A stretch of DNA of 54,475 bases from Girardia tigrina. Lineage: Eukaryota. The DNA lies in contig MQRK01200681.1 in assembly GCA_001938485.1 (NCBI GenBank), positions 1 through 54,475 on the forward strand, read 5' to 3'. Shown piece by piece: positions 3,355 through 53,774 of this stretch (positions are counted from its first letter, which is position 1; every line of letters starts with the position of its first letter). Under the pieces are notes generated by a model. That model did not search any database and was not told the origin of the DNA. It was given only the letters and a program-made list of their open reading frames with translations. A program made the translations under genes and the position numbers.

Positions 3355-3645
3355 TACATAGAATAAATTAGTATGTCTTATCAAGCAGCTAGAGGCAATT
3401 AGAATCTTCATAAATTAACAAAGATTGAAAAATCGAAGTTCAGAAAAATTTTAAATATCAAACTTTTAAAAATTTATTAAAATAAAAACAGTAAAAAGAA
3501 TATTGAGAAATAATTTTAAAATGATATAAAAATGAGTAAGTAAGTCTATAAAAAGGAAAATTTAACAGAAGAAAGTACCCTTTCAAGATTATTTCCATTT
3601 TTAAAACTGCCTAGTTAAACCCTTCAATATTTGTATTATATAGAT

Positions 3646-5035
3646 CAGTGTTTCTCAAAGTCCATAACTATGCGACCACAAAAATTAATGTGCAATGATT
3701 TTGCGACCTCCCCCATGTTTGATTTTCAAATTTTTGCATTAATATTTAGAAAAAAGGTTTTTTATATACATACTATTAAAAAGAAAAAGTTAAGCAGGTA
3801 CATACATTAATTAAGCATTAATACTAAAATAGTTAATTCAAATTTTTATTTTGACAATACATAATATAGTAATAATACATTCACATTTTTTATTTATATT
3901 TCAAGTCCTAAAGGCTTTTATATTGTTGATGCTCTTTAACCAATTTATCTACTCTTCCTTCTATTGAATTATTCAAACTAATTCTCATATTCTGCGTTAC
4001 ATTAACAAGCCTATTTCGATTATTTGTTTTAGGTCTACTAACACAGAAAATCCAGCTTATGCTAAATATGTAGTAGAAAAAGGAAAAAATATAGCCTTTT
4101 CGCTTAACATTGTGTATTCTTCCTGAACTTCCAACCAAAATTTGGTCAAACTTCTTTGTTTAAATAGTAATTCAAAACTTTTATCTGTTGATAATTCAAT
4201 TAAACGCTCTTCGTCTAATGAAGACAGAAAATTGTTTTCGCATTGCATGAATGGATTCTGTATTCACATATTACAGGTACGAATGTCCTGGGAAGGAGGA
4301 AAGTAGATGGCAAATTTGTTTTTTAATTTTAGTAAATGAGCTTTTATAGTAAGTTTTGCAACACCAATTTCTTTAAAATTCAATATGTTTTTCCATCATT
4401 TCCACAAAATTTGGTAACATGTCGAAAGTGTTATTTTTAACTCTATCTAACCAAATATCTGGCTTTTTTGAAAGGCTTCAATTTTGTTATTTCAAGTAAA
4501 AGATTAGTCATAGTACCCTGTATAGATAAATTCAGTTCATTAACTAGTAAAAATACATCAGCCAGATAAGCAACATAATTTTTAAAATTATAAAAATTAA
4601 AATTTAAGTATTAAGTAATTTTAAGTATAATTTAAGTATTAAAATTTTGACGAATAAATAATTAATTTTTTAACAAAACTATTTTCATTGAAATTTGAAA
4701 TTTTTAAAACTTGAAAATTTTGTTATATTTTCCTTGGAAGAAAGCAAATTGAAATATTTTAAAATTTCTGATCAACATGCCTACTTTTTAATTACATACA
4801 TAGTTTTGCCTGCAAATTTTTGTCACAGTTTTTCGTTCCAGAAACACAAATTTCTTTAATATTTTCTGGCAGGAAAAAAATTTTCAAATATTTTTGAAAT
4901 TTCTGATAAAAATTACAATTTTTATACACATTGTAATTTACATATATTAGAATTTATTTTTTCATTATCGCGCAACTACTTTTATACTGTCCGCGACCAC
5001 ACTTGTGGTCGCGACCCCCGGTTTGAGAATCGTTG
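3646..5035 (-). mobile_element. hAT Buster/Charlie-type deleted element
   Basis: 8-bp TSD ATATAGAT; CAGTGTTTCTCAAA terminus; transposase C-terminal remnant LIELSTD...FWLEVQEEY...PFSTTYL. Confidence 0.85.
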
Positions 5036-5699: not shown

Positions 5700-7075
5700 T
5701 AATAACATTTGCGCCTGCAACGTCTGAGAGTCCACCACTGAAAGAATATGTTTCTGATGGTATGCGAAAATTCCGCTCCGCAAAACACATGGTAAAGACA
5801 TAAAACACAATGGACGCCCACATCCACTGATAAAAGAGCTCAAAGGCATTCAATTGAAGCTGATCCGACCCAAAAAACGCTCGAACTCGCCGCTGAACTC
5901 CAACCTTCACATATAACCATTATTTGGAAACTTTGAAAGATGAACATGAAAAATAACCGTGATCAAGAGATTCCGCTTGAACTCAATGAAATGAAAAATA
6001 ATCGGAAAATTAACGACTGTTCTTGGCTATTACCAAAATTGAACTATTATGAATTACAACGGATTTTAAGGTTGTATACGATAACCGGAAACGCAAAAAC
6101 CAATAACTGAGTCCAGGTAAACTTGGAAAACGGACTCCTTGAAGTGATCCGCGTCAAAAAAGGGATTTTGTTTGTTAGGTGGATGACTTAGTGACCTTTT
6201 CACTGAGAACTCCTTCTACACGGTCAAATTTTAACCTCTGAAGTTTACTTCACCCAATTATNNNNNNNNNNNNNNNNNNNNNNNNNNNNNNNNNNNNNNN
6301 NNNNNNNNNNNATAACCATTATTTGGAAACTTTGAAAGATGAACATGAAAAATAACCGTGATCAAGAGATTCCGCTTGAACTCAATGAAATGAAAAATAA
6401 TCGGAAAATTAACGACTGTTCTTGGCTATTGCCAAAATTGAGCTATTATGAATTACAACGGATTTTAAGGTTGTATACGATAACCGGAAACGCAAAAACC
6501 AATAACTGAGTCCAGGTAAACTTGGAAAACGGACTCCTTGAAGTGATTCGCGTCAAAAAAGGGATTTTGTTTGTTAGGTGGATGACTTAGTGACCTTTTC
6601 ACTGAGAACTCCTTCTACACGGTCAAATTTTAACCTCTGAAGTTTACTTCACCCAATTATACTGTGTTCAGACCGCTTTGCGTGTTCGTAGTTGATTTTC
6701 AACAAGATAACTCTAGCCCTGATGTTTCACATCGGACTTTCCAAAAACTTGATGAATTTGGTTGGGATGTTCTTAAACACTAAACCAGATAGTCCAGATG
6801 TTGCCCCTCCGATTATCATTTATTCCGGTCACTGGAACATTTCCTTCGCAGATTGAAATTCTTCTCTTCATTGAAGATGAACACGTGGAACAGGCAGTTC
6901 AAAAGGTTTTCGATCTGAAAACGCCAGAGTTTACCACCTCGGAATTTTCTCATTGCAAACTCGTTGTAGAAGAATAATCGAAAATAATGGCGATTGTATT
7001 AATGAAAAATTTATTTTAAAAATTTTACTTTTAATAAAATGTTAATTTACTGACTAAAACTTTGTTCCAACCTAA
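5700..7075 (+). mobile_element. Degenerate mariner element
   Basis: IEADPTQKTLELAAEL, IPLELNE and SPDVAP/DYHLFRSLEHFL motifs; 3' TIR ...TTCCAACCTAA-TA; 5' limit approximate. Confidence 0.75.
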
Positions 7076-7821: not shown

Positions 7822-8361
7822 TCATGTCAAGCTGTTAATTGTATTATTTTGTCCATTGGATAGGAAGCCGTGTCTCCGCGATATTTTAGAAAGAGAAGAA
7901 ATGTTCGTTGATTTATCATACGCACTCAGAGATTCTCCTCGTTGAATTACATCGTGAATGTTTTTCACTATCATTCTTTGAATACCATTCAAATTTGAAT
8001 TTATTTGAGTAAATGTTATTGGTGTTCGAGTAACTGTATATTTATTTTGAGCATTTTGAATATCTTTATCGAACTCAATAAATGCATATGGTCTTAATGC
8101 CATTTCAAATCTACTGCCATATTCATTGTGAAATTCACCTATAATATCAGTCAACAATATAAATGCCACCTTGTTTGAAAACTCCTTTTCAGTTAAGAGG
8201 ATACAATAAATTCCTCTATCAATTAAATAATGAAAGATATATAGATCACTTTCTATGACACAAACTGAGTGAGATAAATTAGTCATTTTTAATTTTTTTA
8301 TCTTTTGTATTGAAACCGGTTTACGCGGAATTATTTCAATATCTGTTATTAAGTAAATCAT
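7822..8361 (-). CDS. SEC22: Intronless SEC22-like longin R-SNARE lacking the C-terminal transmembrane anchor (nested, antisense; possibly a pseudogene)
   Basis: FHYLIDRGI...AF...EF...RPYAFIEFD..IQ and IQRMIVKNIHDVIQRGESLS match SEC22 longin and SNARE motifs; ATG at 8361 chosen by alignment to the SEC22 N-terminus. Confidence 0.7.
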   Translation of the reverse strand: MIYLITDIEIIPRKPVSIQKIKKLKMTNLSHSVCVIESDLYIFHYLIDRGIYCILLTEKEFSNKVAFILLTDIIGEFHNEYGSRFEMALRPYAFIEFDKDIQNAQNKYTVTRTPITFTQINSNLNGIQRMIVKNIHDVIQRGESLSAYDKSTNISSLSKISRRHGFLSNGQNNTINSLT

Positions 8362-9418
8362 TTCCCCAATTGAAGACAAAACTTTTTCAAATATTTTTAT
8401 TTTTAAGAAACCTTTTTTTATTGAATCAAATTTACACTTTATTTTTGAACAGACATTTTTTTTTACCATTTGAAAACATCGAAAATTCTGTCTTTTTAAA
8501 AATTGATTTGAATTGTGACAACAATTCACAATAACAAATTAACACACATAGCACACACTTTCAACCAATCAATTATTTAACATATCATACACACAAACAC
8601 AAACATACACTTACCAGACATTCACACAAGCCAATCACCAAATAAAAAACATACCTGATCATATTGCAATTACATAATTCCACGCATACATAATTTCACA
8701 AAGGAGGCTGACAATTCATAATTTACATTTTCCTCGATTGATTTGAAAAACCATTTATGAATACATTTCACTAAATTCGACTAATATCAGAATTCAACTG
8801 TAATTGTCNTCGTAATGGAATAAAGAGCTCAATTTTCATTATTTAATTTAATTGTTTTATGTTCAATTATTTAATTTATTTATTTTCTTTTCGTTAATTA
8901 CTTATTTTAATTTAATTAAANATTTATTTAATTATTTTAATTTATTTTAATTGATTAATCTAATTATATATTTTATTTATATTTTACTGAAACTGGCAAA
9001 AATGTTCGGTCAAATCAGCAATTCTCCGCTCCATCCGCTTTACACAGAAATACACACAGTCGACGTGCGGAAATAAATTTCATTAAGATAAGTCTTAACA
9101 AACTATTGTTATATTATGACAAAAAGAAAAGCTATCGATTAATCCAGTTAAAAAATGTCGAATTCAAAGGGTTAAAATGCTTTGGTTAATATTTCAACAA
9201 ATTTTCAGAATTGTCCTTCAATTGAAAAAAGTAAAAAACAGACATTCATGAACTTCGACCATCGCAATAGTTCAGAATATCTATCAAATTTAGAAGCAGA
9301 ATTCTGAAATACTGAAAACTCAAAATTACATAATATATTACGTTGTGTACCAACTAAGTAGAGAGCCTACCTTAGACAAACTAATCTAATTCAAATGAAA
9401 TTTATTTTCCATAACAAC

Positions 9419-10479: not shown

Positions 10480-11049
10480 TTTCTCGCACGGCTGTAGATG
10501 CAAGAATGCAAGCTTTCAGTGCATGGGCACGCTTCGGTTTCCCAGTCAGAAAGGACCAGTCATGATCCCTCGTACCGTGAGTCTGTAGAGCTTTGGCTGT
10601 GTAAACACGTTTCGTACAATGAATAAAGGGACCGGAAATATCCCAACATCATTTGTATTACTTAACCGAAAGTCGAGGACCACCCTTGGAATCACTCCTG
10701 GGTCCATCTCCGCGGTACCATCGAGAGGCACTGACAAATCATGCATCGCGATCTGGTTCGAAGATTTTGTACATCCTTCATCTGCGTTATTTTGTGAAGC
10801 ATTAGTGCCACTGATACTGTCTTGGGTTCGGTGATCGATCAATAAATGTCTCTTTAACCATCCATTTGTTTTATATGTCTTGTGACAATTTTCCATGGGA
10901 CATTTGAAATGTTTGTCACCAGTCTGACGCTGCGGCGTCGTGATCGTATGTAAGTTTTTAATGTGTCTTCTTAGTTCCTTCTGTTCCGCAAAATCTTTGA
11001 AACAAGAAGTATAAGTGCATTGCACTATTTTGATACGTGACTGGAGCAT
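10480..11049 (-). pseudogene. C2H2 zinc-finger ORF, frameshifted
   Basis: CTYTSC..F....ELRRHIKNLH and CPMENC..Y....WLKRHLLIDH; a third finger-like motif (PFIHCTKRVYTAKALQTHGTRDH) follows in another frame. Confidence 0.55.
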
Positions 11050-11569
11050 TTTCGGGTACTCTTTTATATAGATTAAATTATAAATTATATAGTTAAATTG
11101 TATAGAAATACATTTTCTAAAAAAAAATTCGCAAATCATTTGAACATATATGCATAATATGCACTTCAATTATTTTATTTTTTGATTTTGTATTTGTCTT
11201 GGTTAGTAAAATAGATGGAAAATTGTGATAATGAATATTATAAAACTGGCGTCGAAGTTAACATTAAAAAGCATTTTCAACAACTTTTATAAATTTGGAT
11301 CTGGTGAAAATTTTGTTAATTACATTTGTGCAGTAGCTCGAGTTAATGTTTTCATAATTTTATAATTAATATTTAATGATTTTTGGAAAAAGTCCAAATA
11401 TGTGTGGTTTCATAAAAATATATTATTTATGACAAATATTATGTTCTTCATAAAAGCACTTTTATGTCAAAATTAATTCTTTAAATCGTGAATTGTCATT
11501 TGTAGTTCAAAAGTTTTTTTAGACTCTTAAATTATAGAAAGTTTATTTTGTGAAATTATTTTTTTTATT

Positions 11570-12570: not shown

Positions 12571-13419
12571 TTTTACTTTATATAATATTTATATTTAAAA
12601 CTCAGTATTATTATTTAATAATGACATTTAAAATGAGCAAAATAATGATTTTTTAACTTTAATTTCTGTTGTTATAAAAAGGTTAAATATTTAAAATTTC
12701 AAATCTTAATTATTGTGTGAAACATTGAAAATCCTTTTACAAGATTATATGTACCATAAAGTAGCGAAGCTTAGTATTTATTCCTTGTATTATATATCCT
12801 TATCTTGTTTTTTCAACATAAATTCGAGGCATAACTTTTCAATGAGATTTGAAAATTAATAACAACGACACATTATTAAATCAAAACAGAATATAATGAT
12901 GGTTAAAAAAATATATTCTTGAAATATAATTAAATAAATAAACTACTGGTAAAAGCTTTAAAATTTTATATTTCTTGTTCTTCTTTTATCCAACAACATA
13001 AATTTGACTAAAACAAAATTCATACATTTCAGAATATATTTCGACAGATCAAAAGTCATCGTCAGATCACTAACTGATTTATTGATTCATTATTATATAT
13101 ACGATTGATGATTATAAAATATGTTGCATGAAATCGTGCTATTCAAAAATTCTTAATAAGCTGTTTGACGCTGTCGTTTGAATATTGATTTTAAGTCAAT
13201 GTGACATAATTAAAAATGCTTCACATGACACTCTCCGAATAACTATCAAAATATCATAACGGAATCTTGAAATTATCGATTTTAATATCACTTTTGCATT
13301 TTCCATTGTTCAGTAATATGATTCTAGCCCTATTTTCGACCGTGTTTTTGAATTCGTTAATTAAAATTGCAGACATTTTCTCCTATGAATGTAATATTGC
13401 ACCTATTAGATTGATATTC

Positions 13420-13518
13420 TGTAGAATGAGACATATTATTTTGTTTGAATATTCTCGATTTTAAAAATCATTCTTTTGTCATGAAAATAAATCATTATTT
13501 GTCGTTGCTGGAATTACA
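13420..13518 (+). repeat. 5' LTR (99 bp)
   Basis: Direct repeat of 17155-17252 with about 7 differences. Confidence 0.95.
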
Positions 13519-13530
13519 AGCTATCCGGGC
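13519..13530 (+). promoter_or_regulatory. Putative non-canonical primer-binding site complementary to tRNA-Lys(UUU) nt 1-12
   Basis: AGCTATCCGGGC directly abuts the 5' LTR; reverse complement GCCCGGATAGCT equals the conserved 5' end of animal tRNA-Lys(UUU). Confidence 0.7.
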
Positions 13531-16500
13531 AAATATGGATCTAAAAATGTTATTGGCCGTTATTCCTCGATTCGACGGAAAATCGACTCCAATTAGAGAA
13601 TGGAGAACGAAGTTCGAAATCATTGCCGGATGTCAGGGAATTTCCGATCCCAAAGAGTTGGCTAAAATCTTACCGTTATTCCTCGAGAGAGCGGTATTCA
13701 AGATCTATGAAAATATCAATGAGAAGCAGGGAAGCTACGAGCAAGTAATGTCACTTTTGATTAAAGCGTTCGATGTAGATGAGTTCGGCGCTTTTGAGCA
13801 GTTTTTGGATCGTTAATTGAAAGTCGGTGAGACCGTCGATGAGTATTGCGCTGAAATTAATGAAATTGCTCGACGTATTGAAAATTTACCCATATGTGCC
13901 TTTTGCAATGGCCTGCTGGCGGATGTCAAGAGGGAGATCAGACGAAGCCAAGTTACGTCGCTCTCGGAGATGCTGAAGCTGGCCAGGGAGCTACTGAAGG
14001 TCGAAAGGAGTGGCCTAACGGACGTATCGATGGTCGCGCCTCGAGCTAACATCTCAGGAGAGCGTGGTGGTTTCAATTCTGGAAAGGCTAAAGCCTACGC
14101 TAGGTCACATGTATCAGATGACAGTGAGGTCAGATAGGCGGAAGGAAACCGTTCGAAAGACTCCTCACCGTTTTCAAAGTTCAACGTCAGAGGCTTTAGA
14201 TGCCTCCAGAAAGGCCATTTTGTCTAAGAGTGTAGGAACGGCTAAAATGTAAATCATTCAATGATAATGGTCATTCTGCCAGAAATTTTCATGCGAGAAA
14301 CGGGTACCGGAGTACGTCACAGTAGATACCGGATGTACTCCTGGAGCGAAGTTAATTACCAGATCTCTAATTATAAACGGTCGTGAGTTAATTGATTCTG
14401 GCGCGTCTAGAACCATTGTCGTTGGTAAATCGAAGAAATTTGACAGGTGGATCACAATGATGGATGTCAGTAAAGTGCGAGCCTCGGAGAGTAAATTTGA
14501 GGTGATAATCGGTGATGTTAAATGCGTTAGGCGGGTTTTGATTGTTGATAAATTGCTACCGGGGTTTAACGCCATCGTTGGTCTCGACGTGATCCAACAG
14601 CTGGGGGTATGACAATTGATAAAGAAGCGGTTTTTGGTTGTGAGAAAATGGATTGCATCGCGATTGATGCTTGTGATAGAGAAAGGGTCGACCGTTTAAA
14701 AAATACTGAGAAGAATTTTGAAGTATCATACGACCGATATTGGAGGCTGAAATGGAAATGGTCAATAGGGGAGGAACCCAAATTTGATTATCAGTGTGGC
14801 AGTTACAATGTTAGTAAATCCGTCAAAGACAAGTTTCAGGAGGTAATGGAACAGTGGGTTGAGAAAGGACTATTCAATATTGTATGATGAACAAAGATTC
14901 GGGCCTCCTAAGTGCACTATTCCAATTTTTCCGGTCGTTCAGGTAAATAAAGACAAGATCAGACCTGTTTTCGATTTTCGACATATTAATGAAAATGTGG
15001 ATGGGTATAATGGCAACAGTGCAGTTTGCTGTGAGATGCTCCGGAAATGGAGAAAAAATTCTAGTAAGTGTGCAATGTTAGACTTAAAGGACGCGTACAT
15101 GCAAGTGTTCATTGAGGATGAAATGTTACCGTATCAAATAGTGTTATATAAAAAAAGAAGTATGCATTAACTAGAATAAGCTTCGGGTTGAATGTGAGCC
15201 CAACTGTTATGACAAAAATTGTGGAGAAGGTGCTGTCAATGAGTTCCAAGATTAATGAAGCTGCTGACGTGTATATAGACGGTATTTTTGTGGACGAAAG
15301 TATTGTACCAGTAGAAAAAGTTAAAGATCATTTGCTAAAATATGGATTAGTCTCGAAAGATCCGGAGAAATTTTCAACAAGAAACATCCATGAGAGTGCT
15401 GGGATTGGAGTGTTTCGAGACAATTACGGCACGCTTCGCTGGAGACGGGCAAACAGATTGCAGTTAGATCTAGACGAGGTAAAAACTAGGCGAAATCTGT
15501 ATTCCTTCTGTGGACAAATCACCGGAATCAACAACGTTTGCGGATGGTTACGTGTTGCAATATCGTTTCTTAAACGTCAATCTACCGGAGATTGGGACAG
15601 TTCGATTCGCGAAGAATTGAAGAAAGCGATGGGAGATATGGTAGAAAAAATAAAGGCTAATGATTGCGCTAGTGGAACTTGGTCTGTGAAGGACCAAGGT
15701 CCTTTGGTGTGATGCTAGTACGTTGGTGCTGGACGTTTGTTTAGTTGTAGATGGACAGAGAATGCCTCTTGGCTTCGTAAAGTGAACGACTGCTTAATTG
15801 AGTTAGAAGCGGCTGTAAAAGGGTTAAAACCTAGCGATTGCATGGGTTTTTTTGGATATTGAGTTTAGACTCGACAGTCAGGTTGTTTGTGGATGGATAT
15901 CGAATGTGATCGATAACGTGGAAAGAGATAAGATTAAGGCGGTTTCTGAACTATTGATTCGTAGAAGACTCAATCTACTCAAAGATATTGTTTCCGAGCA
16001 TAATTTGAAGCTGCGTGTGGTCTACGTCAGGTCTGAGAAGAACGATGCTGACATCTTAACGAGAATCCCTTCACAATGGTCTTTTTTAAGTCGCCCAACG
16101 GAAGATGACAATGTTCTAATGGCTTCCTTAGAATCGGATATCGAGAGATTTAAACAGATTCATGACGAAACGCACATGGGACTCCAGAGATCAGTTTTTC
16201 TAACGAAGTAATTTAACGTTAACATCAGCGATGAAAAAATTCAGCAAATCATCCTTCAGTGTAACCGGTGTCAATCTATCGATCCAGCACCCGTTCGATG
16301 TGAAAAGTGGAGTTTGGATGTCGCTGAAACTTGGAAAAAAATAGCAATTGATGTTACAAAGTTCGAGAAGTCCAGGTACCTCACAATCATTGACTGTGGG
16401 CCGTCGCGATTTGCAATTTTGAGACTCATCAGAGATGAAGGAGCACAGGAAGTCATCAAGAATCTGAGAAATGTATTTTTCTAACTTGGAGCCCCTGCCG

Positions 16501-17154
16501 AGTTATTAGCAGATAATTATTCGTCTTTCCATTCCGAAGCTTTTACTGCTGAGATGAAGCCCTGGAATATCAATGTCGAGCCGTGAATAGACCGAGTGGG
16601 AATGGTAATTTCGAAAGGAGCCACCGGACCGTCAAGGCGTTAGCCGCGAGAGCTGGAAAAAAGGATCCAGGGAGCGGTTTGCTGGATGAATAACACCCCC
16701 CCGGAATAAACAATAGGCCACCAGTCAAATTTCTGTATGGATATAAGCCTCGATTGAAGTTGATCGTTAACTTAACCGATCAAGCAAGTAAGGGAACCCT
16801 TTGTTCATATAAATTTAGAGTGGGAGAAAATGTTTAGGTGAAACCAAATCAGATCCAACGTTGTAGTGAAAAATGGACAGAATGAGTCATCAAAGAAGTG
16901 ATTAGTCCTGTTAAATTTCTTGTCTCCATCAGAAACGTCGATTCATTGCGTCATGTCACTGACCTCCGACCGCGATCCGAGTTGATTGTCTCGGAGCTGA
17001 TTGATTAGCCTTTTCGTGAAGACGAATCACCGAGCGAACATACCACCACGATTCCAGTCGACACTGAATCAGTTGTTCGAGAGTGTCGACCTCCTAAGAA
17101 ATTTCAGGACTACGTTTCATGGGACGATATAGATTCTGCCGAATCTGGGGGAGA

Positions 17155-17252
17155 TGTAGAAGGAGACATATTATTTTTTTGAATATTCTCGATTTTAAAA
17201 ATCATTATTTTGTCGTTGAAATAAATCATTATTTGTTGTTGCTGGAATTACA
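17155..17252 (+). repeat. 3' LTR (98 bp)
   Basis: Preceded by polypurine tract, followed by TSD TATTC. Confidence 0.95.
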
Positions 17253-17762
17253 TATTCATAAACAATATTAAAATATAGGGTAAAGGATGTGATAGACTGA
17301 TTACTGAACATTATCTACGTTTGTTACGCTTAAATTATTCATCATAATAACAGTGATAATCTTTAAGAAATAATAATTGATCTTTCTTAATAACACAATT
17401 CAAATAAAATTTCGATTCTCTTTTTTACTTTACTCAAATCCAGATCTCTAATGATTTTAATACAAGATCTTCTAAATTGCCATGCTATATTTTGCTTAAA
17501 TAACTTTAAATATAAAACAAATTCTAAATTAATTCAATTATTTAAATCTCAACTTATCATGTATAGTTTTTCGTTTTAAGTGACACTATAATAATTAATA
17601 ATAAATTTTAATAGATTTTGGAACATATATTAAAATAATTAACCTTTCCTAATTGCAGTTTAAATTTTTTATTGAAAAAAATATATTTTTCATTCTCTTT
17701 TAATTTTTTATCGGATTTAAAGTGGAAGTAATTTGATAAATTTATTAATTTGTTTCATTCAG

Positions 17763-26085: not shown

Positions 26086-26873
26086 AAGGGCGCAATAAAG
26101 GTCAGCGTCGAAACCAAACACACAAAAGTGCCTTCCTTGAGAAACGATCTCGTTTCGCTACCGGTTTCGCCATTTGTCCGGGCTCCAACAATTGATTTTG
26201 TTGGTCTGGATTACTAAAGTAAACCCACTTTTCATCGCAAGCTACAATTCGACGGATGAAACTGTCATCGCGCGGATTTTCAAGCAATTTTTGACAAGTT
26301 TCGAAACGCTTTTCTGCTTGAATTTGTGTCAATTCATGAGGCACTTCTCGACATCGTCTATTGACCTTGCCAAGAGCGTGAAGGTGTTGCACAATGGATG
26401 TTTGAGGAATATTGAGTTTGGCCGACAATCTGCGAGTACTTATTGACAGATTTGTCTCGACGGCTTCACGAATTGCTCCGGAATCTACGGTGATAGGTCG
26501 GCCTGAACGTGCATTGTCTTCAAGGTCAATGTCGCCTTCGTTGAACCTTTTGAACCAATTTTGTGCAGTACGATTTGAGACCACATTATCGCCTTCAACT
26601 TCACATATCTTCTTTGTTGCTGCAGTTGCGTTTAAGCCCTGTTTCCAGTAATGGCGTAAAAGAACACGACTTTCAAAATTTTCCATAATTTTTCTAAAAG
26701 ACGATAAAAATTATATTAATGACTACTTAGAAGTTTTAATATATATTGTGATAGAGCAGTTCAAGAACTTTAAAAACATATAACACATGTATATAAAATA
26801 TCTTTATTTGGTAATAAGAAACAATTGAACAAAAAGATGTAGAAAATACGAAAAGACTTTTGGTTCACCCTAA
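26086..26873 (-). mobile_element. Internally deleted mariner with transposase ORF 26102-26686
   Basis: HTH, RSGRP, VPHEL and IVACDEKWVYF motifs; TIR TTAGGGTGAACCAAAAAGTC next to TA; catalytic C-terminal half missing. Confidence 0.9.
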
Positions 26874-40467: not shown

Positions 40468-40562
40468 AGATATACGATAATTCTGTTATGGAAAAGAAAG
40501 CCTTAGAACACAACCTACCTCTGACCAGTGTTCGATTGAAACGTGCAGCTAAGCTTACAACA
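40468..40562 (+). repeat. 95-bp intronic copy of dynein exon sequence 43788-43882
   Basis: Direct comparison shows 3 substitutions in 95 bp. Confidence 0.9.
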
Positions 40563-40944
40563 ACTGACAACAACAATTTAAACCATTGTGATGTTTTTTT
40601 AATTTTTATCACAATTTTTTCATATTTTTGATAAATATTATTGTTATCAAAGACATGAATAGAATGGAATAATTTGGACGTTTTAGTTGCGTTTGTGTCT
40701 TGACAAAGGTCCGTAAGATCATAAGAAATATGTTTTCCTAAGTATACAAAGTTTATTGTAGATACGGTTTTTATTTCAATTTACTATTTATTGCATATTG
40801 ATATTTTTTCAGACTTCAAAGGATATAAAGTATATAAATTAATAAACTTATAAATTTCAACTAAAACTTGTATGAACTGAAACAAATTTTAAATAATCTA
40901 AATGAAATAAAATCATATTTGATTGTCAAAGTTAATAAGAATGT

Positions 40945-41141: not shown

Positions 41142-43097
41142 NNNNNNNNNNNNNNNNNNNNNNNNNNNNNNNNNNNNNNNNNNNNNNNNNNNNNNNNNNN
41201 NNNNNNNNNNNNNNNNNNNNNNNNNNNNNNNNNNNNNNNNNNNNNNNNNNNNNNNNNNNNNNNNNNNNNNNNNNNNNNNNNNNNNNNNNNNNNNNNNNNN
41301 NNNNNNNNNNNNNNNNNNNNNNNNNNNNNNNNNNNNNNNNNNNNNNNNNNNNNNNNNNNNNNNNNNNNNNNNNNNNNNNNNNNNNNNNNNNNNNNNNNNN
41401 NNNNNNNNNNNNNNNNNNNNNNNNNNNNNNNNNNNNNNNNNNNNNNNNNNNNNNNNNNNNNNNNNNNNNNNNNNNNNNNNNNNNNNNNNNNNNNNNNNNN
41501 NNNNNNNNNNNNNNNNNNNNNNNNNNNNNNNNNNNNNNNNNNNNNNNNNNNNNNNNNNNNNNNNNNNNNNNNNNNNNNNNNNNNNNNNNNNNNNNNNNNN
41601 NNNNNNNNNNNNNNNNNNNNNNNNNNNNNNNNNNNNNNNNNNNNNNNNNNNNNNNNNNNNNNNNNNNNNNNNNNNNNNNNNNNNNNNNNNNNNNNNNNNN
41701 NNNNNNNNNNNNNNNNNNNNNNNNNNNNNNNNNNNNNNNNNNNNNNNNNNNNNNNNNNNNNNNNNNNNNNNNNNNNNNNNNNNNNNNNNNNNNNNNNNNN
41801 NNNNNNNNNNNNNNNNNNNNNNNNNNNNNNNNNNNNNNNNNNNNNNNNNNNNNNNNNNNNNNNNNNNNNNNNNNNNNNNNNNNNNNNNNNNNNNNNNNNN
41901 NNNNNNNNNNNNNNNNNNNNNNNNNNNNNNNNNNNNNNNNNNNNNNNNNNNNNNNNNNNNNNNNNNNNNNNNNNNNNNNNNNNNNNNNNNNNNNNNNNNN
42001 NNNNNNNNNNNNNNNNNNNNNNNNNNNNNNCTTGAATTTCTCGCATCTCAGCTATCAGAAAATTTGGGACAAATTGACTTCACAATTTACTTACTACAGT
42101 ATCTTCCAGCGTGTTATACATAGTCATTTTTCTTTTCTTTCACGCTTCTTTTCTATTTAGTTTTTATCAGTCACACGGTTTTTCCTAGAGGAGTGCTCTT
42201 TACAACTATTCAGTTGTAGATTTTGACATTTATATTTGTGAGGAATGTTCTGAATTGTTTGTTGTTTTATATTTTGAGTGTTGTGTGTTGATTCGTATTG
42301 TGTCTCTCCTATCCAGATGGCTGATTAATATTTTCTTTGATTCTTACTATTTGAAAATAATTTATTTTAATTTTAAAGTACAAATATTTAAAATATGTAT
42401 AAAATATAATATTTAGATATTCAAATGTAATATTTAATTTTTAATTTAAAATTTTTATTTAATTAATTTAATTAATAAAATTTTTAGATTTGATTTTAAC
42501 TAATGAGAGTTTTCATAAATAAATAATATTATAATTAGTTTCCAATTTGTTTTTAAAAAACTAAGATGACATAGAAAAGTATTAACCGTGAAAAAATGTC
42601 GAATAATAATGAAAATAGTTTAAATAATTGTTGTAATGACAATTCTACTTGTAATATTAAGAAATGTTCGAAAAATCATATTGATGTTTTAAATAATAAT
42701 CCTTCATTTCTATGTAGTCTTTTCAGCTGACAAACGATCACATTTATCTCAGTCTTTGTCAATTGCAAAAAATTAATTCGTGATCATAAATAAGATTTAA
42801 TGTTACATTTTTTGCGAAACCACTGTTCAAGGGGTCTTGTTCCTATTAAAAAATTAAAAATGGAAGTTTAAATAGCAGTGAATCGTGTCGCAGAGTTTTG
42901 CGAATTACGATTCGTTCACATTTATAATTTATACTAATATTATATTTTTACTATAAAATCACTTAGTAAATTTAAATCTTATGCAATAATATTCATCAAT
43001 ATAATTCGTCGTTTTTTTTATTTTGAATATTGTAAACACTAAAACATAATTTAACTTTTAATAAACTCTTGATTAAAATATGATGTACCATTGTTAG

Positions 43098-43634: not shown

Positions 43635-43686
43635 GTTAACGGATTAAAGTGATTAAATGATTAAAATTGATTGAATTATTATTTAG

Positions 43687-44947
43687 ACTTGAAATTGCAA
43701 ACAAAGAATTGGATGAGGTTATGGCGAAATTAAGGCAGAAACAAGCTGAATTAAAGGCAGTCGAAGACAAGATAGCAGAATTACAAAAGATATACGATAA
43801 TTCTGTTACGGAAAAGAAAGCCTTAGAACACAACCTAGCTCTGACCAGTGCTCGATTGAAACGTGCAGCTAAGCTTACAACAGCTTTAGCTGATGAAAAA
43901 GAAAGATGGACAGAAAGTGTAGCAAAATTTAATGAGGAATTGGGAAATGTTGTTGGAGATGTATTTATCGGAGCAGCTTGTGTTGCTTATTATGGGGCAT
44001 TTACCAGCTCCTACAGACATGAACTATTAAACGGGTGGATTGCTCGCTGTAAAGAGTTAGAAGTACCAGTTTCTGAAAATATTTCTCTGATGGGTGTATT
44101 GGGAGATGCTTTTGAATTACGCCAATGGAATTCAGAAGGTTTACCACGTGATCAGGTTTCAACTGAAAATGCGATACTTGTTACTCGTGGTCGCAGATGG
44201 CCGTTAATGATTGATCCTCAAGAACAAGCTAACAGATGGATACGAAATAAAGAAGCAGAGAATCAACTGAAAATAATAAAATTGACCGAAGGAAACTTCT
44301 TAAGAACTCTAGAAAACTGTATTAGACTAGGAATGCCTGCATTGCTTGAAGATATAGGAGAAACTTTAGATCCAGCTCTTGAACCCATTTTATTAAAGCA
44401 GACTTTCGTAAAAGCCGGCAGAACATTGATACATCTGGGTGATTCGGATATTGAATACAGTAAAGATTTTAAATTATATATAACAACTAAGCTTTCAAAT
44501 CCTCATTATATGCCGGAGATATGTATTAAAGTCACGATTATTAATTTTACCGTAACCCCTCAAGGTCTTGAAGATCAATTACTTGGAGAAGTTACTCGTC
44601 TTGAACGTCCAGAATTGGAAGAACAACGAAACAATTTGATTATCCGAATAAATAACGACAAAAATCAATTGCAGTTAACAGAAAATCGTATTCTTAAATT
44701 ATTATTTGAATCAGAAGGAAATATTCTTGACCATGAAGATCTGATTAATACACTTAATGAATCCAAAGTCACTTCTGCGGAAACAACCAAACGATTGATG
44801 GAAGCAGAAGTCACTGAACAAAAAATTACTGTGGCCCGATCTAAATATATCCCAGTCGCAGCACGGGGCTCGGTAATGTATTTTGTGGTTGCCAATATGG
44901 CTGAAATCGATCCAATGTACCAATTTTCATTGAAATACTTCAAAACG
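43687..44947 (+). CDS. DNAH6: DNAH6-like exon 19 (CC2, AAA5)
   Basis: [16 protein letters not shown]...[14 protein letters not shown]...IDPMYQFSL. Confidence 0.95.
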
Positions 44948-46285
44948 GTAAGTAAAGTTTGAATATAAATAATAAAATTTACTATAGATATAGACTAACA
45001 AGTGTATTTGCTCTAAGTTCTCATATTAAAGAATTCAGAAAAGACGGTACACTTATTAGTCTATTAGAATTAAAATGCTCTGTTAAAATACCAAAGAAAA
45101 TAATAATTGGATTTAACTTTATAATTTTATTATGATGCTAAACGTTAAATAAAAGAATAAATAGAATATTATAATATATAATTGGATTTTTCTAATATGA
45201 CAGAAATTATAATGGCGGAGACTAGAACCGTTATGTTTACTTTATTTCATCAAGCTCTAAATATATTTGGAACATATATTAAAAACTAGTAAATCAAAAA
45301 TTAAATTTTTTATAACCATTCTTTATGCAAACAGAACTCTACTTTGTCAACAAAGTTTTAATTAAAAAAATAATTTCAAGAAAAGCACAAAAAAATAAAA
45401 AAAATAATATAATTTATAAGTAGATCTTCTTCAATTAATATTGTTCAGAATCTCCGATGGGACCATTTTTTTCACAATTCTTGAGACCTTTAAAAAGTAT
45501 TTTTTTCTAATACATTTTTTTTAAAAAATAATAATTTGTGATTTATAATTTTAAAATTATAAATTTCATATAAGAATTTTGAAAATAAATTTTGAAATAG
45601 ATTTTTGTACTAAAATTGAAATAAATAATAATTTCTAAAACTTAATTTTAATAAAATTAAAAAACAATGGCATTTTGAAATCATTAAAAAATATATAACG
45701 CCATTTTTCAACATTTATTTTAGTAATTAATTTCGTGGGTTTACCCACTATTTTCAAACTAAATTACAGTTGATTTTTGAAATTTATATATGATGATAAA
45801 TTATGATTATGCGATATTTGAATAGAGTAAAGTTTGAGACCTAATAATTTAAGACATTAATAAGATCAATGGATCCGAAAATTAATATTCAAACTTCACA
45901 CTCTACATCTCTGTTAAACATTTCCAAATAGAACCTTTATGACATAATCAATTGCACAATCACTTTCATCATATATAAGCTTTAAAATCCAATTTTAATT
46001 TTGTTTGAAAATAGCGGTAATCCACTGAAATAAATTCATAAAATAATGGTTAAAAATAAGGTTCAATATTTTTTAAAAAATAATCATTTTTGAGTTTTAA
46101 CATATTTTATAATATTTTAAATGATTTTGAATTTTAAATGTTTAAATGATTTTGAATTAATTGTTTTGATGATTTGAAAATTAAATAATTTTGATAGTTT
46201 AAAACTAAATATTTAGTACTTTGAAACTTTTGACCGTCAAACATATAGAAATACAAATGTTTAGATGCAAATATATAGTTTATAT

Positions 46286-50626: not shown

Positions 50627-50744
50627 AAAAAAATTATGTATATAAAAACAATCGATAAAAAAAATCATTAATNNNNNNNNNNNNNNNNNNNNNNNNNNNN
50701 NNNNNNNNNNNNNNNNNNNNNNNNNNNNNNNNNNNNNNNNNNNN

Positions 50745-50863
50745 GTTTTCTACAACCCAATTTATCAATATTCCCCCTGAAAGTGCTCTTCTTTATGTGA
50801 TCTATTTTCTCAAAATCTCGTTGTGCAACCGAATGATTCTCTAACGTTTCCATCGATATTGTT
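50745..50863. repeat. Direct repeat copy 1 flanking H3 (truncated by N gap)
   Basis: 119 bp identical to 51402-51520. Confidence 0.85.
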
Positions 50864-50893
50864 TAAATCTTTCTCAATACACGATATCAATAT

Positions 50894-51523
<630 letters not shown>

Positions 51524-52643: not shown

Positions 52644-53730
52644 CTCTTCAATAATACCATTGAAAATAGTCAAAAAAGTCAAGATTTGGAAGAAAGAATC
52701 AAGATTCTTTTATCAGAAACCACTATATCAACGTATAATAATGTAGCAAGAGGTCTTTTTGAGAAAGATAAATTAGTCTTTTCTTTCATGCTGTGTAGTC
52801 AAATAATGCGCCAGTCTGGTACGATAAATGATGTTGAATGGGACTTTTTCTTGCGAGGAATTGGTGGGATCGAGAAAAAGCGACCAGAAAAGCCTAATTA
52901 CCCTTGGATATCAATGGGTGTTTGGAATAACCTTGTTGATGCAGCAGATACTGTGCCGGTGTTTGCAAACTTAATAAACGACATAATGTCGATGCATATA
53001 AGTGTTACAATTGGTGAATTAAGTATATCTGTAAACCAAGAAGAGAGTGACTTATATAAACCTTTACCTCCACAACCAACGGAGGAAGAAATCGAAAAAT
53101 CAAGAACTGATGCTAATTTTGCAAAAACGTTGTCAGGACATTATGACTTAAGATTGACCTCATTTCAAAAATTAATATTAGTTAAAGTTTTTTGTGAAGA
53201 AAAAATAATTCTTTGTGTTACTGAATTCGTGAAACTAAATCTCGGTCCACGATTTGTCGAGCCCCCACCAACAGATCTGCCACTTCTCTTTCAAGATATG
53301 AGCAAAATATCACCATTAGTGTTTGTTTTAAGTACAGGATCTGATCCTATGAGCCAATTCCAAAGATTTGCCAAAGAAAGAAACTATATGGAACGAGTTC
53401 AAGCTATTTCATTAGGTCAAGGACAAGGTCCAGTAGCAGAAAAAATGATGGATGCTGCCGCGAAAATCGGAGATTGGGTGTTTCTTCAAAATTGTCATTT
53501 GGCTGCTTCTTGGATGATAAGATTAGAAGAAATTGTTAAGAAAAGAGCTGAAAACCCGTACGAAGTTCATGAAGATTTTCGATTATTTCTCAGTTCAATG
53601 CCAGCTAAAACTTTTCCAATATCAGTTCTTCAGAATTCAGTTAAAGTAACCAATGAACCTCCGAAAGGTTTACGAGCCAATATTAAACGAGCTTTCAATG
53701 AAATGAGTCCTCAATTTTTCGAAACTCATG
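52644..53730 (+). CDS. DNAH6: DNAH6-like exon 20 (AAA6)
   Basis: RGLFEKDKL...[12 protein letters not shown]...ISLGQGQGP...[10 protein letters not shown]...[11 protein letters not shown]. Confidence 0.95.
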
Positions 53731-53774
53731 GTATATTAATTTATCAAAGAAACTCCTGTTTATTGTATTTATAG

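What the first reader, a model, noticed from the sequence alone, without database searches (positions are those of the whole stretch)
13519..13530. LTR retrotransposon whose PBS is complementary to the 5' end of tRNA-Lys(UUU): possible priming by a ~12-nt 5' tRNA fragment
Seen: the 5' LTR ends ...ATTACA and is followed with no spacer by AGCTATCCGGGC. There is no TGG (complement of CCA), the motif has no complement inside the LTR, and the gag ATG follows at 13535. Known: animal tRNA-Lys(UUU) begins GCCCGGAUAGCUCAG, a 12/12 match that ends exactly at tRNA nt 1; tRNA-Lys(CUU) differs at position 7. Known priming modes are the tRNA 3' end, the half tRNA-iMet of Copia/Ty5, and Tf1 self-priming. Inference: pairing places tRNA U12 next to the LTR, so minus-strand synthesis would need a tRNA cut after nt ~12 in the D-stem, either as a host 5'-tRF or trimmed by the element's RNase H. 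A chance 12-mer match at this fixed position is very unlikely even allowing for all tRNA 5' ends. I cannot check whether it has been reported for this clade.
Basis: partly seen in the sequence, partly recalled or inferred. Interest (0 to 1): 0.9.

Follow-up and report, generated by a model that had tools for sequence, protein, structure and literature searches.

The report
Retrotransposon primer site matching tRNA start
A dead jumping gene in a flatworm genome, and about fifty-five relatives in worms, crustaceans and environmental DNA, carry beside their left repeat a 12-letter site that matches the first 12 letters of a transfer RNA rather than its last 18, pointing to a way of starting reverse transcription that I could not find described.

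Summary
A decayed 3.8-kb LTR retrotransposon lies at 13420-17252, with 99/98-nt LTRs, a 5-bp target duplication and a polypurine tract. AGCTATCCGGGC follows the 5' LTR with no spacer, and the gag ATG comes 4 nt later. This 12-mer is the exact complement of nt 1-12 of published human tRNA-Lys3.

It is not a one-off. Every related locus that keeps the gag 5' region (about 55) has ACA|AGCTAT plus 6 nt at the same place. These include Trichuris suis, and barnacle and crab copies with 100% identical LTRs. One common variant is the exact complement of nt 1-12 of tRNA-Phe(GAA). Conservation stops at the LTR end and at tRNA nt 1. The variable letters correspond to acceptor-stem positions 4-7.

No locus contains the complement of its own 12-mer, so Tf1-type self-priming is excluded. 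A distant relative has a classical tRNA-Phe 3'-end site at the same position.

The best reading is a primer-binding site for the 5'-terminal 10-12 nt of a tRNA that is cut in the D stem. Priming itself, the cutting enzyme and the host's own tRNA sequences remain unverified. Ten full-text searches found no prior description.

The parts
13415..13419 (+). left copy of the 5-bp target-site duplication (TATTC)
   Evidence: Same 5 nt at 17253-17257. Young relatives also have 5-bp duplications.
13420..13518 (+). 5' LTR, 99 nt, TGTAG...TTACA, with an AATAAA near its end
   Evidence: Direct repeat with 17155-17252.
13519..13530 (+). 12-nt putative minus-strand primer-binding site, complementary to nt 1-12 of a tRNA that begins like animal tRNA-Lys(UUU)
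   Evidence: Same site type in about 55 related loci.
13535..14300 (+). gag (broken). The start is exact. The end is approximate, set by analogy with the 229-271-aa gags of relatives.
   Evidence: The N-terminal piece is 33-40% identical to relatives' gag N-termini. At least one in-frame stop. Relatives' gag lengths.
14600..16993 (+). pol (broken): PR-RT-DUF7047-RNase H-integrase order by similarity. Coordinates are the outer bounds of similarity.
   Evidence: tblastn of seven relatives gave 1-2 frame changes between aligned blocks and 2-10 in-frame stops, depending on the relative. Domain order of relatives.
15485..15655 (+). DUF7047 domain (PF23088) between RT and RNase H, the Pfam signature of this clade
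   Evidence: E 3e-13. Present in all relatives scanned.
17147..17154 (+). polypurine tract GGGGGAGA
   Evidence: Abuts the 3' LTR. Similar purine runs precede the 3' LTR in L003, L085 and L086.
17155..17252 (+). 3' LTR, 98 nt
17253..17257 (+). right copy of the target-site duplication (TATTC)

Best explanation
The 12-mer is the minus-strand primer-binding site of a compact (3.8-4.2 kb) clade of LTR retrotransposons. It pairs with the first 12 nt of a host tRNA. In the window that tRNA begins like animal tRNA-Lys(UUU). In relatives it begins like tRNA-Phe(GAA), or like one of at least six other tRNAs that share U8-A9-G10-C11-U12. Shown: the position, the clade-wide conservation, the exact matches and the absence of other pairing partners. 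Inferred: the annealed tRNA (or a 5' half) is cut in the D stem after nt 10-12. The most likely agent is the element's own RNase H acting at the end of the RNA:RNA duplex, as in Tf1, because RNase H leaves an extendable 3'-OH. RT then extends into U5. Plus-strand strong-stop DNA copies the primer to its natural 5' end, which would explain why the conserved block ends exactly at tRNA nt 1. The window copy itself is dead and only preserves the site.
For: (1) Element anatomy. (2) Exact complement of nt 1-12 of published tRNA-Lys3. (3) Of 84 sources, 52 carry ACA plus the 12-mer type. All other loci with a gag N-terminus carry a degraded or truncated version at the same spot (L005, L069, L080) or are the outgroup L003. 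L087 and L088 add two more variants. (4) Thirteen loci carry AGCTATTTCGGC, the exact complement of nt 1-12 of tRNA-Phe(GAA). (5) Conservation drops to background at position -4 and at +13. Free positions 7-9 vary, and these correspond to tRNA nt 4-6. (6) The same discrete variants recur in separate branches of an RT tree. Separate lineages from one sample share a variant. This is what matching to external templates predicts. (7) Young copies with 100% identical LTRs and 5-bp duplications, in Amphibalanus amphitrite and Petrolisthes manimaculis, have the site directly after the LTR. So does Trichuris suis. (8) No self-complement in the upstream 300 nt beyond shuffled controls. No reverse complement at up to 2 mismatches anywhere in 54 loci. 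(9) The gag ATG follows 0-34 nt later, leaving no room for another site. (10) The outgroup L003 has, 5 nt after its LTR, an 18-mer whose first 16 nt equal the human tRNA-Phe reverse primer, which is a classical 3'-end site at the homologous place. (11) Relatives encode an RNase H domain.
Against: No host tRNA gene could be read: there is none in the window or in 87 loci. Only two of about ten variants could be matched to a published tRNA. No data show a primer, a cut or a cDNA junction. A cut inside the D stem is not a documented tRNA processing site as far as I know. Two variants fit less well: L062/L065 end in CG rather than GC, and L088 reads best as 13 nt. The first two letters (AG) could instead be the two extra U5 nucleotides trimmed by integrase, so the primer may be 10 rather than 12 nt. 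The columns used to find the motif are conserved by construction.
Confidence: 0.6

Rival explanations
1. The site binds the tRNA 5' end, but the primer is a pre-existing host 5' tRNA fragment or half. The element's RNase H plays no part in making the 3' end.
For: 5' tRNA fragments and halves are abundant in animals (PMC3710361). The pairing evidence is the same as for the best explanation.
Against: Known 5' fragments are 14-35 nt and would leave an unpaired 3' tail, because the LTR end (ACA in 50 of 56 sites) cannot pair with tRNA nt 13-15. Many host tRNA nucleases leave a cyclic phosphate that cannot be extended (established knowledge). No fragment data were available for these hosts.
Confidence: 0.15
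2. The 12-mer is a conserved leader signal with another role, and priming happens in some other way. Possible roles are tRNA or 5'-fragment binding for packaging, translation control or silencing, or mimicry of a tRNA 3' acceptor strand.
For: Nothing here shows DNA synthesis from this site. The 12-mer contains the same letters as the 3' acceptor strand of the matching tRNA.
Against: It occupies exactly the primer-site position, where the outgroup has a classical site. Its borders coincide with the LTR end and tRNA nt 1. No alternative site fits between the LTR and the gag ATG. No self-primer exists.
Confidence: 0.15
3. Tf1/Tj1-type self-priming: the 5' end of the element's own transcript folds back onto the site.
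For: The site length (12 nt) is close to the 11 nt of Tf1. The mechanism is known from fungi to vertebrates (PMC4600332).
Against: The longest match between the site's complement and the upstream 300 nt is 4-7 nt in 48 loci, the same as for shuffled controls. No complement at up to 2 mismatches anywhere in 54 loci, nor in the window.
Confidence: 0.03
4. A chance match, or a classical 3'-end site hidden in the start of gag.
For: A TGG is formed by the ATG plus G at 13536-13538.
Against: The gag start lies 0-34 nt from the site, and gag N-termini are not conserved at the DNA level. The 12-mer type is present in about 55 loci whose RT is only 35-45% identical in amino acids.
Confidence: 0.01

Closest known systems
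Tf1 / Tj1 self-primed reverse transcription (fission yeasts; Tf1/sushi group)
   Same: The primer would be a short 5'-terminal RNA segment (11 nt in Tf1, 10-12 nt here) annealed to a site right after the LTR. It would be released by a cut at the end of an RNA:RNA duplex that in Tf1 needs the RNase H domain (PMC4600332 and its references 14-17). Plus-strand strong-stop synthesis can run off the primer's natural 5' end.
   Different: The pairing partner is not the element's own transcript but matches the 5' end of tRNAs. It acts in trans and the partner differs between lineages.
copia / Ty5 'half-tRNA' priming
   Same: A tRNA is used after an internal cut rather than through its CCA end (PMC5371799).
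   Different: By established knowledge, copia and Ty5 pair with the region of initiator tRNA-Met that ends in the anticodon stem-loop. Here pairing is with nt 1-12 of elongator-type tRNAs, the cut would be in the D stem, and the primer is far shorter.
Classical tRNA 3'-end priming (retroviruses, most LTR retrotransposons; bipartite in Ty1/Ty3)
   Same: Same position of the site and same use of host tRNA. The distant relative L003 has such a site for a tRNA-Phe-like 3' end. The window's 12-mer matches the other end of the tRNA (Lys3) that, by established knowledge, lentiviruses use through its 3' end.
   Different: There is no TGG. The complementarity is to the opposite strand of the acceptor stem plus the start of the D stem. 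The site is 12 nt rather than 18 nt.

Membership tests
LTR retrotransposon (general) | Two direct LTRs with TG...CA ends, a target-site duplication, and a polypurine tract before the 3' LTR | tested here: met
LTR retrotransposon (general) | gag and pol with protease, RT, RNase H and integrase | tested here: met
   Met by similarity only, since the copy is broken. Relatives show PR-RT-DUF7047-RNase H-IN.
Ty3/gypsy (Metaviridae) | RT-RNase H-IN order with gypsy-type RT/RNase H signatures (Pfam RT_RNaseH families) | tested here: inconclusive
   The order is met. The eight relatives scanned directly hit only generic RVT_1, RNase_H/RVT_3 and rve plus DUF7047. Of the relatives listed, one carries PF17919, in a 1510-aa model (P0199). 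The nearest solved structures are retroviral integrases and RTs, at weak E-values.
Bel/Pao | Pfam Peptidase_A17, DUF1758/DUF1759 and DUF5641 signatures | tested here: not met
   None found in the window pieces or in eight relatives.
Retrovirus | An env gene and a classical 18-nt tRNA 3'-end site | tested here: not met
   The 3.6-kb interior is filled by gag-pol. The site is not of the TGG type.
Tf1/sushi self-priming group | Site complementary to the start of the element's own transcript within the LTR | tested here: not met
copia/Ty5 half-tRNA priming | Site complementary to an internal stretch of initiator tRNA-Met | tested here: not met
   The complement equals nt 1-12 of the tRNA-Lys3 and tRNA-Phe primers, ending at nt 1. 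The copia side of the comparison rests on PMC5371799 and on established knowledge.
Proposed 5'-tRNA-end priming clade (DUF7047 elements) | ACA|AGCTAT plus 6 nt directly after the 5' LTR, complementary to nt 1-12 of a tRNA | tested here: met
   Window and about 55 loci.
Proposed 5'-tRNA-end priming clade (DUF7047 elements) | The host encodes a tRNA with that 5' end, and a cDNA is made from it | not testable with these tools
   No host genome access. No tRNA gene in the window or loci.

The most novel reading that the evidence does not exclude
A fourth way of priming LTR-retroelement reverse transcription, used by a whole invertebrate and protist-associated clade. The 5'-terminal 10-12 nt of a tRNA, freed by a cut in the D stem, serve as primer. 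Lineages switch among tRNAs that share nt 8-12 (UAGCU). The mode evolved from a relative that used the 3' end of a tRNA-Phe-like tRNA, so the earliest switch may have been to the opposite strand of the same acceptor stem.
Probability: 0.55. Interest if true: 0.9.

Novelty: new variant of a known kind. Interest (0 to 1): 0.8.

Why it matters
The reviews I could read list three priming modes for LTR elements: the tRNA 3' end (bipartite in Ty1/Ty3), the copia half-tRNA and Tf1 self-priming (PMC5371799). A site that matches the tRNA 5' end would add a fourth.

To my knowledge, annotation pipelines look only for complements of tRNA 3' ends. They would therefore report these elements as lacking a primer site.

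The finding also makes a question testable with existing data. Are 5' tRNA fragments, whose functions are debated, used by or aimed at retroelements, in the way 3' fragments are aimed at classical sites?

The invariant UAGCU next to the LTR suggests a sequence-specific cut. This gives structural work on the RT-DUF7047-RNase H unit a concrete question.

Tried and rejected
- **Host tRNA search.** ARAGORN and Rfam found no tRNA in the window, and ARAGORN found none in 82 loci. The host tRNA therefore could not be read.
- **Look-ups of window ORFs** to find the source record failed.
- **Closest relative.** The nearest hit to the window element (P0001, 86% identity) sits on a 520-nt contig with no LTR.
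- **Other relatives without usable context.** The Macrobrachium locus came without DNA. The Trichinella locus has no LTR pair.
- **Matching variants to tRNAs.** Paper searches for the other 12-mer variants, in DNA or RNA letters, gave only chance matches. Those tRNAs remain unidentified.
- **Odin retrotransposons** (PMC9040795) were considered as the clade's name. That paper mentions neither a primer site nor these hosts. DUF7047 occurs in no paper.
- **Arabidopsis 5'-fragment paper** (PMC11962134). It concerns a fragment with the same sense as a classical site, not priming.
- I did not scan viral contigs with the element's proteins, because I could not tell whether that might fetch animal viruses. 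I searched one dynein exon by reference and did not join exons. N runs were left as they are.

Full report
**1. Observation**

The letters are as described. AGCTATCCGGGC occupies 13519-13530, directly after ...GGAATTACA, and an ATG follows at 13535.

The repeat search found the matching LTR end 3734 nt downstream. Alignment of the two regions shows that the LTRs are short: 13420-13518 (99 nt) and 17155-17252 (98 nt). They read TGTAG...TTACA and differ at 7 of 99 columns.

A 5-bp duplication, TATTC, flanks the element at 13415-13419 and 17253-17257. The purine run GGGGGAGA (17147-17154) abuts the 3' LTR. The element is therefore 13420-17252.

The 12-mer follows only the 5' LTR. It is unique in the window, and its reverse complement is absent at up to 2 mismatches.

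**2. What the element is**

The interior (3.6 kb, 41.5% G+C in a 28% G+C window) is a decayed gag-pol.
- The reading frame from the ATG resembles the gag N-termini of relatives at 33-40% identity. It has at least one in-frame stop.
- Pol similarity spans about 14600-16993. It shows 1-2 frame changes between aligned blocks and 2-10 in-frame stops, depending on the relative used.
- Pfam sees only DUF7047 in the window pieces.

I searched 1.8 billion representative proteins with the longest open pol piece. This gave 557 relatives. Their architecture is PR-RT-DUF7047-RNase H-integrase, some with a CCHC gag.

Bel/Pao signature families are absent. Gypsy-type RNase H families are absent from the eight relatives scanned directly. 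One of the relatives listed carries PF17919, in a 1510-aa model. The nearest solved structures are retroviral integrases and RTs, at weak E-values. The clade's placement among LTR elements therefore stays open.

Named relatives come from Trichuris suis and T. muris, Trichinella spiralis, and the crustaceans Macrobrachium, Petrolisthes and Amphibalanus.

The window's host is a flatworm. An axonemal dynein exon is 95% identical to unnamed entries and 73-75% identical to the trematodes Echinostoma caproni and Paragonimus westermani.

**3. The site in relatives**

- **Trichuris suis (L002).** Both LTRs end in ACA (CTCACA on the 5' side, CACACA on the 3' side). The 5' one is followed at once by AGCTATCGAGGC and then ATG.
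- **Metagenome contigs.** A scan with an alignment of relatives gave 80 loci. Together with the other sources, 52 of 84 carry ACA (rarely TCA or ATA) followed by AGCTAT-NNN-GGC-like 12-mers. The gag ATG lies 0-34 nt downstream.
- **Loci lacking the strict motif.** There are 32. Of these, 28 have no gag N-terminus on the contig. L069 and L080 carry versions with 1-3 changes at the same spot. In L005 the first four letters are replaced near the contig start. L003 is a distant outgroup.
- **The two nearest relatives of the window's RT (L087, L088)** add further variants.
- **Young genomic copies.** Amphibalanus amphitrite (L085) and Petrolisthes manimaculis (L086) each have 100% identical LTRs, TG...CA ends, 5-bp duplications and a purine tract. 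Both have the 12-mer directly after the LTR.

**4. Match to tRNA 5' ends**

- The complement of the window's 12-mer equals the first 12 nt of the human tRNA-Lys3 forward primer and of a 19-nt Lys 5' fragment. L076 has the same variant.
- The complement of AGCTATTTCGGC (13 loci, including the young barnacle copy) equals the first 12 nt of tRNA-Phe(GAA) primers.
- The other variants gave no literature match. These are the complements GCCTAGATAGCT, GCCGCGATAGCT, GCCGTGATAGCT, GCCGGGATAGCT, GCCTCGATAGCT and GGGGGTATAGCT.

Among 48 distinct contexts, conservation falls to background at position -4 and at +13. The freely varying positions 7-9 correspond to tRNA nt 4-6 in the acceptor stem. The part next to the LTR corresponds to U8-A9-G10-C11-U12, which many tRNAs share. 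Some of those columns were fixed by the search pattern.

In an RT tree, the same discrete variants recur in separate branches. Separate lineages from one sample share one variant. This pattern is expected if the site is matched to a small set of external templates.

**5. Alternatives excluded**

- **Self-priming.** The site's complement matches the upstream 300 nt no better than shuffled controls do, with a maximum of 7 nt. No locus contains the reverse complement of its own 12-mer at up to 2 mismatches.
- **A hidden classical site.** The space up to the gag ATG is 0-34 nt and is not conserved.
- **The outgroup L003.** It shares gag, DUF7047 and the pol order. Five nt after its LTR it has an 18-mer whose first 16 nt equal the human tRNA-Phe reverse primer. 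This is a classical 3'-end site at the homologous place. It argues that the 12-mer of the clade occupies the primer-site slot.

**6. Mechanism (inferred)**

Pairing puts tRNA nt 12 next to the LTR, so a 3'-OH must be made after nt 12. If the first two letters (AG) are instead the extra U5 dinucleotide trimmed at integration, the cut falls after nt 10.

The closest precedent is Tf1, where an 11-nt 5'-terminal segment is released by an RNase H-dependent cut of an RNA duplex. The relatives here all encode RNase H.

A primer that begins at tRNA nt 1 lets plus-strand strong-stop synthesis end by run-off. This fits the sharp 3' border of the block.

The invariance of the UAGCU-complementary part suggests either a sequence requirement of the cut or a restriction to tRNAs with A9. 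It is established knowledge that G9 is often methylated on its pairing face.

None of these steps is shown by data.

**7. Literature**

Ten full-text searches found no report of an LTR element with a site complementary to a tRNA 5' end. A review lists only the 3'-end, half-tRNA and self-priming modes. The library lacks most subscription journals, so an older report cannot be excluded.

**8. Limits and conduct**

Host tRNA genes were not available. The tRNA identity rests on 12 nt, and the same 15-mer turned up in papers on E. coli tRNA-Phe.

Pieces were searched apart. Only counts and outer bounds of breaks are given. N runs were left untouched, and one dynein exon was searched by reference without joining exons.

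None of these strings was used as evidence.

**9. Verdict**

The feature is real and clade-wide, and it is best read as a primer-binding site for the 5' end of tRNAs. It is a new variant of tRNA-fragment or terminal-segment priming. Interest is high, and the mechanism is unproven.

Noticed in passing
L003:3566-3995 (ENA ERZ26858995 contig): A distant relative with DUF7047 has about 420-nt LTRs. Five nt after its LTR lies a classical 18-nt site whose first 16 nt equal a human tRNA-Phe reverse primer. This is the same acceptor stem as the Phe-type 5'-end variant of the clade.
   Followed up: partly
L004, L015, L016, L018 (metagenome contigs): Two copies of the LTR-end/12-mer junction lie about 4.0 kb apart on one contig. 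In many other contigs the junction sits mid-contig with pol wrapping around it. This suggests tandem arrays or repeat-collapsed, circularly permuted assemblies.
   Followed up: no
L002:3820-3847 and 8080-8108: In the T. suis copy about 28 nt of the 5' flank recur after the 3' LTR instead of a 5-bp duplication. The site lies beside a 106-nt tandem repeat (3604-3815).
   Followed up: no
window 26102-26686 (-): An ORF with the HTH_48 domain of Mos1/mariner transposases, probably a remnant of a mariner-type DNA transposon.
   Followed up: no
window 43667-44962 and 52686-53774 (+): Large exons of an axonemal dynein heavy chain (AAA_9, MT stalk, D6). A 98-nt stretch at 40468-40565 recurs at 43788-43885 (96%) beside an 889-nt N run (41142-42030).
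   Followed up: partly
window 50745-51520: A histone H3-like ORF (50894-51349, minus strand) is bracketed by two identical 119-nt direct repeats (50745-50863, 51402-51520) next to an N run (50673-50744). This may be a tandem histone unit or an assembly duplication.
   Followed up: no
window 5913-6611: Two 300-nt copies, 99% identical, flank a 50-nt N run (6262-6311). This looks like a gap-edge duplication in the assembly.
   Followed up: no
window 7822-8529 (-) and 10546-11169 (-): A longin/synaptobrevin SNARE exon and a C2H2 zinc-finger ORF lie upstream of the element.
   Followed up: no
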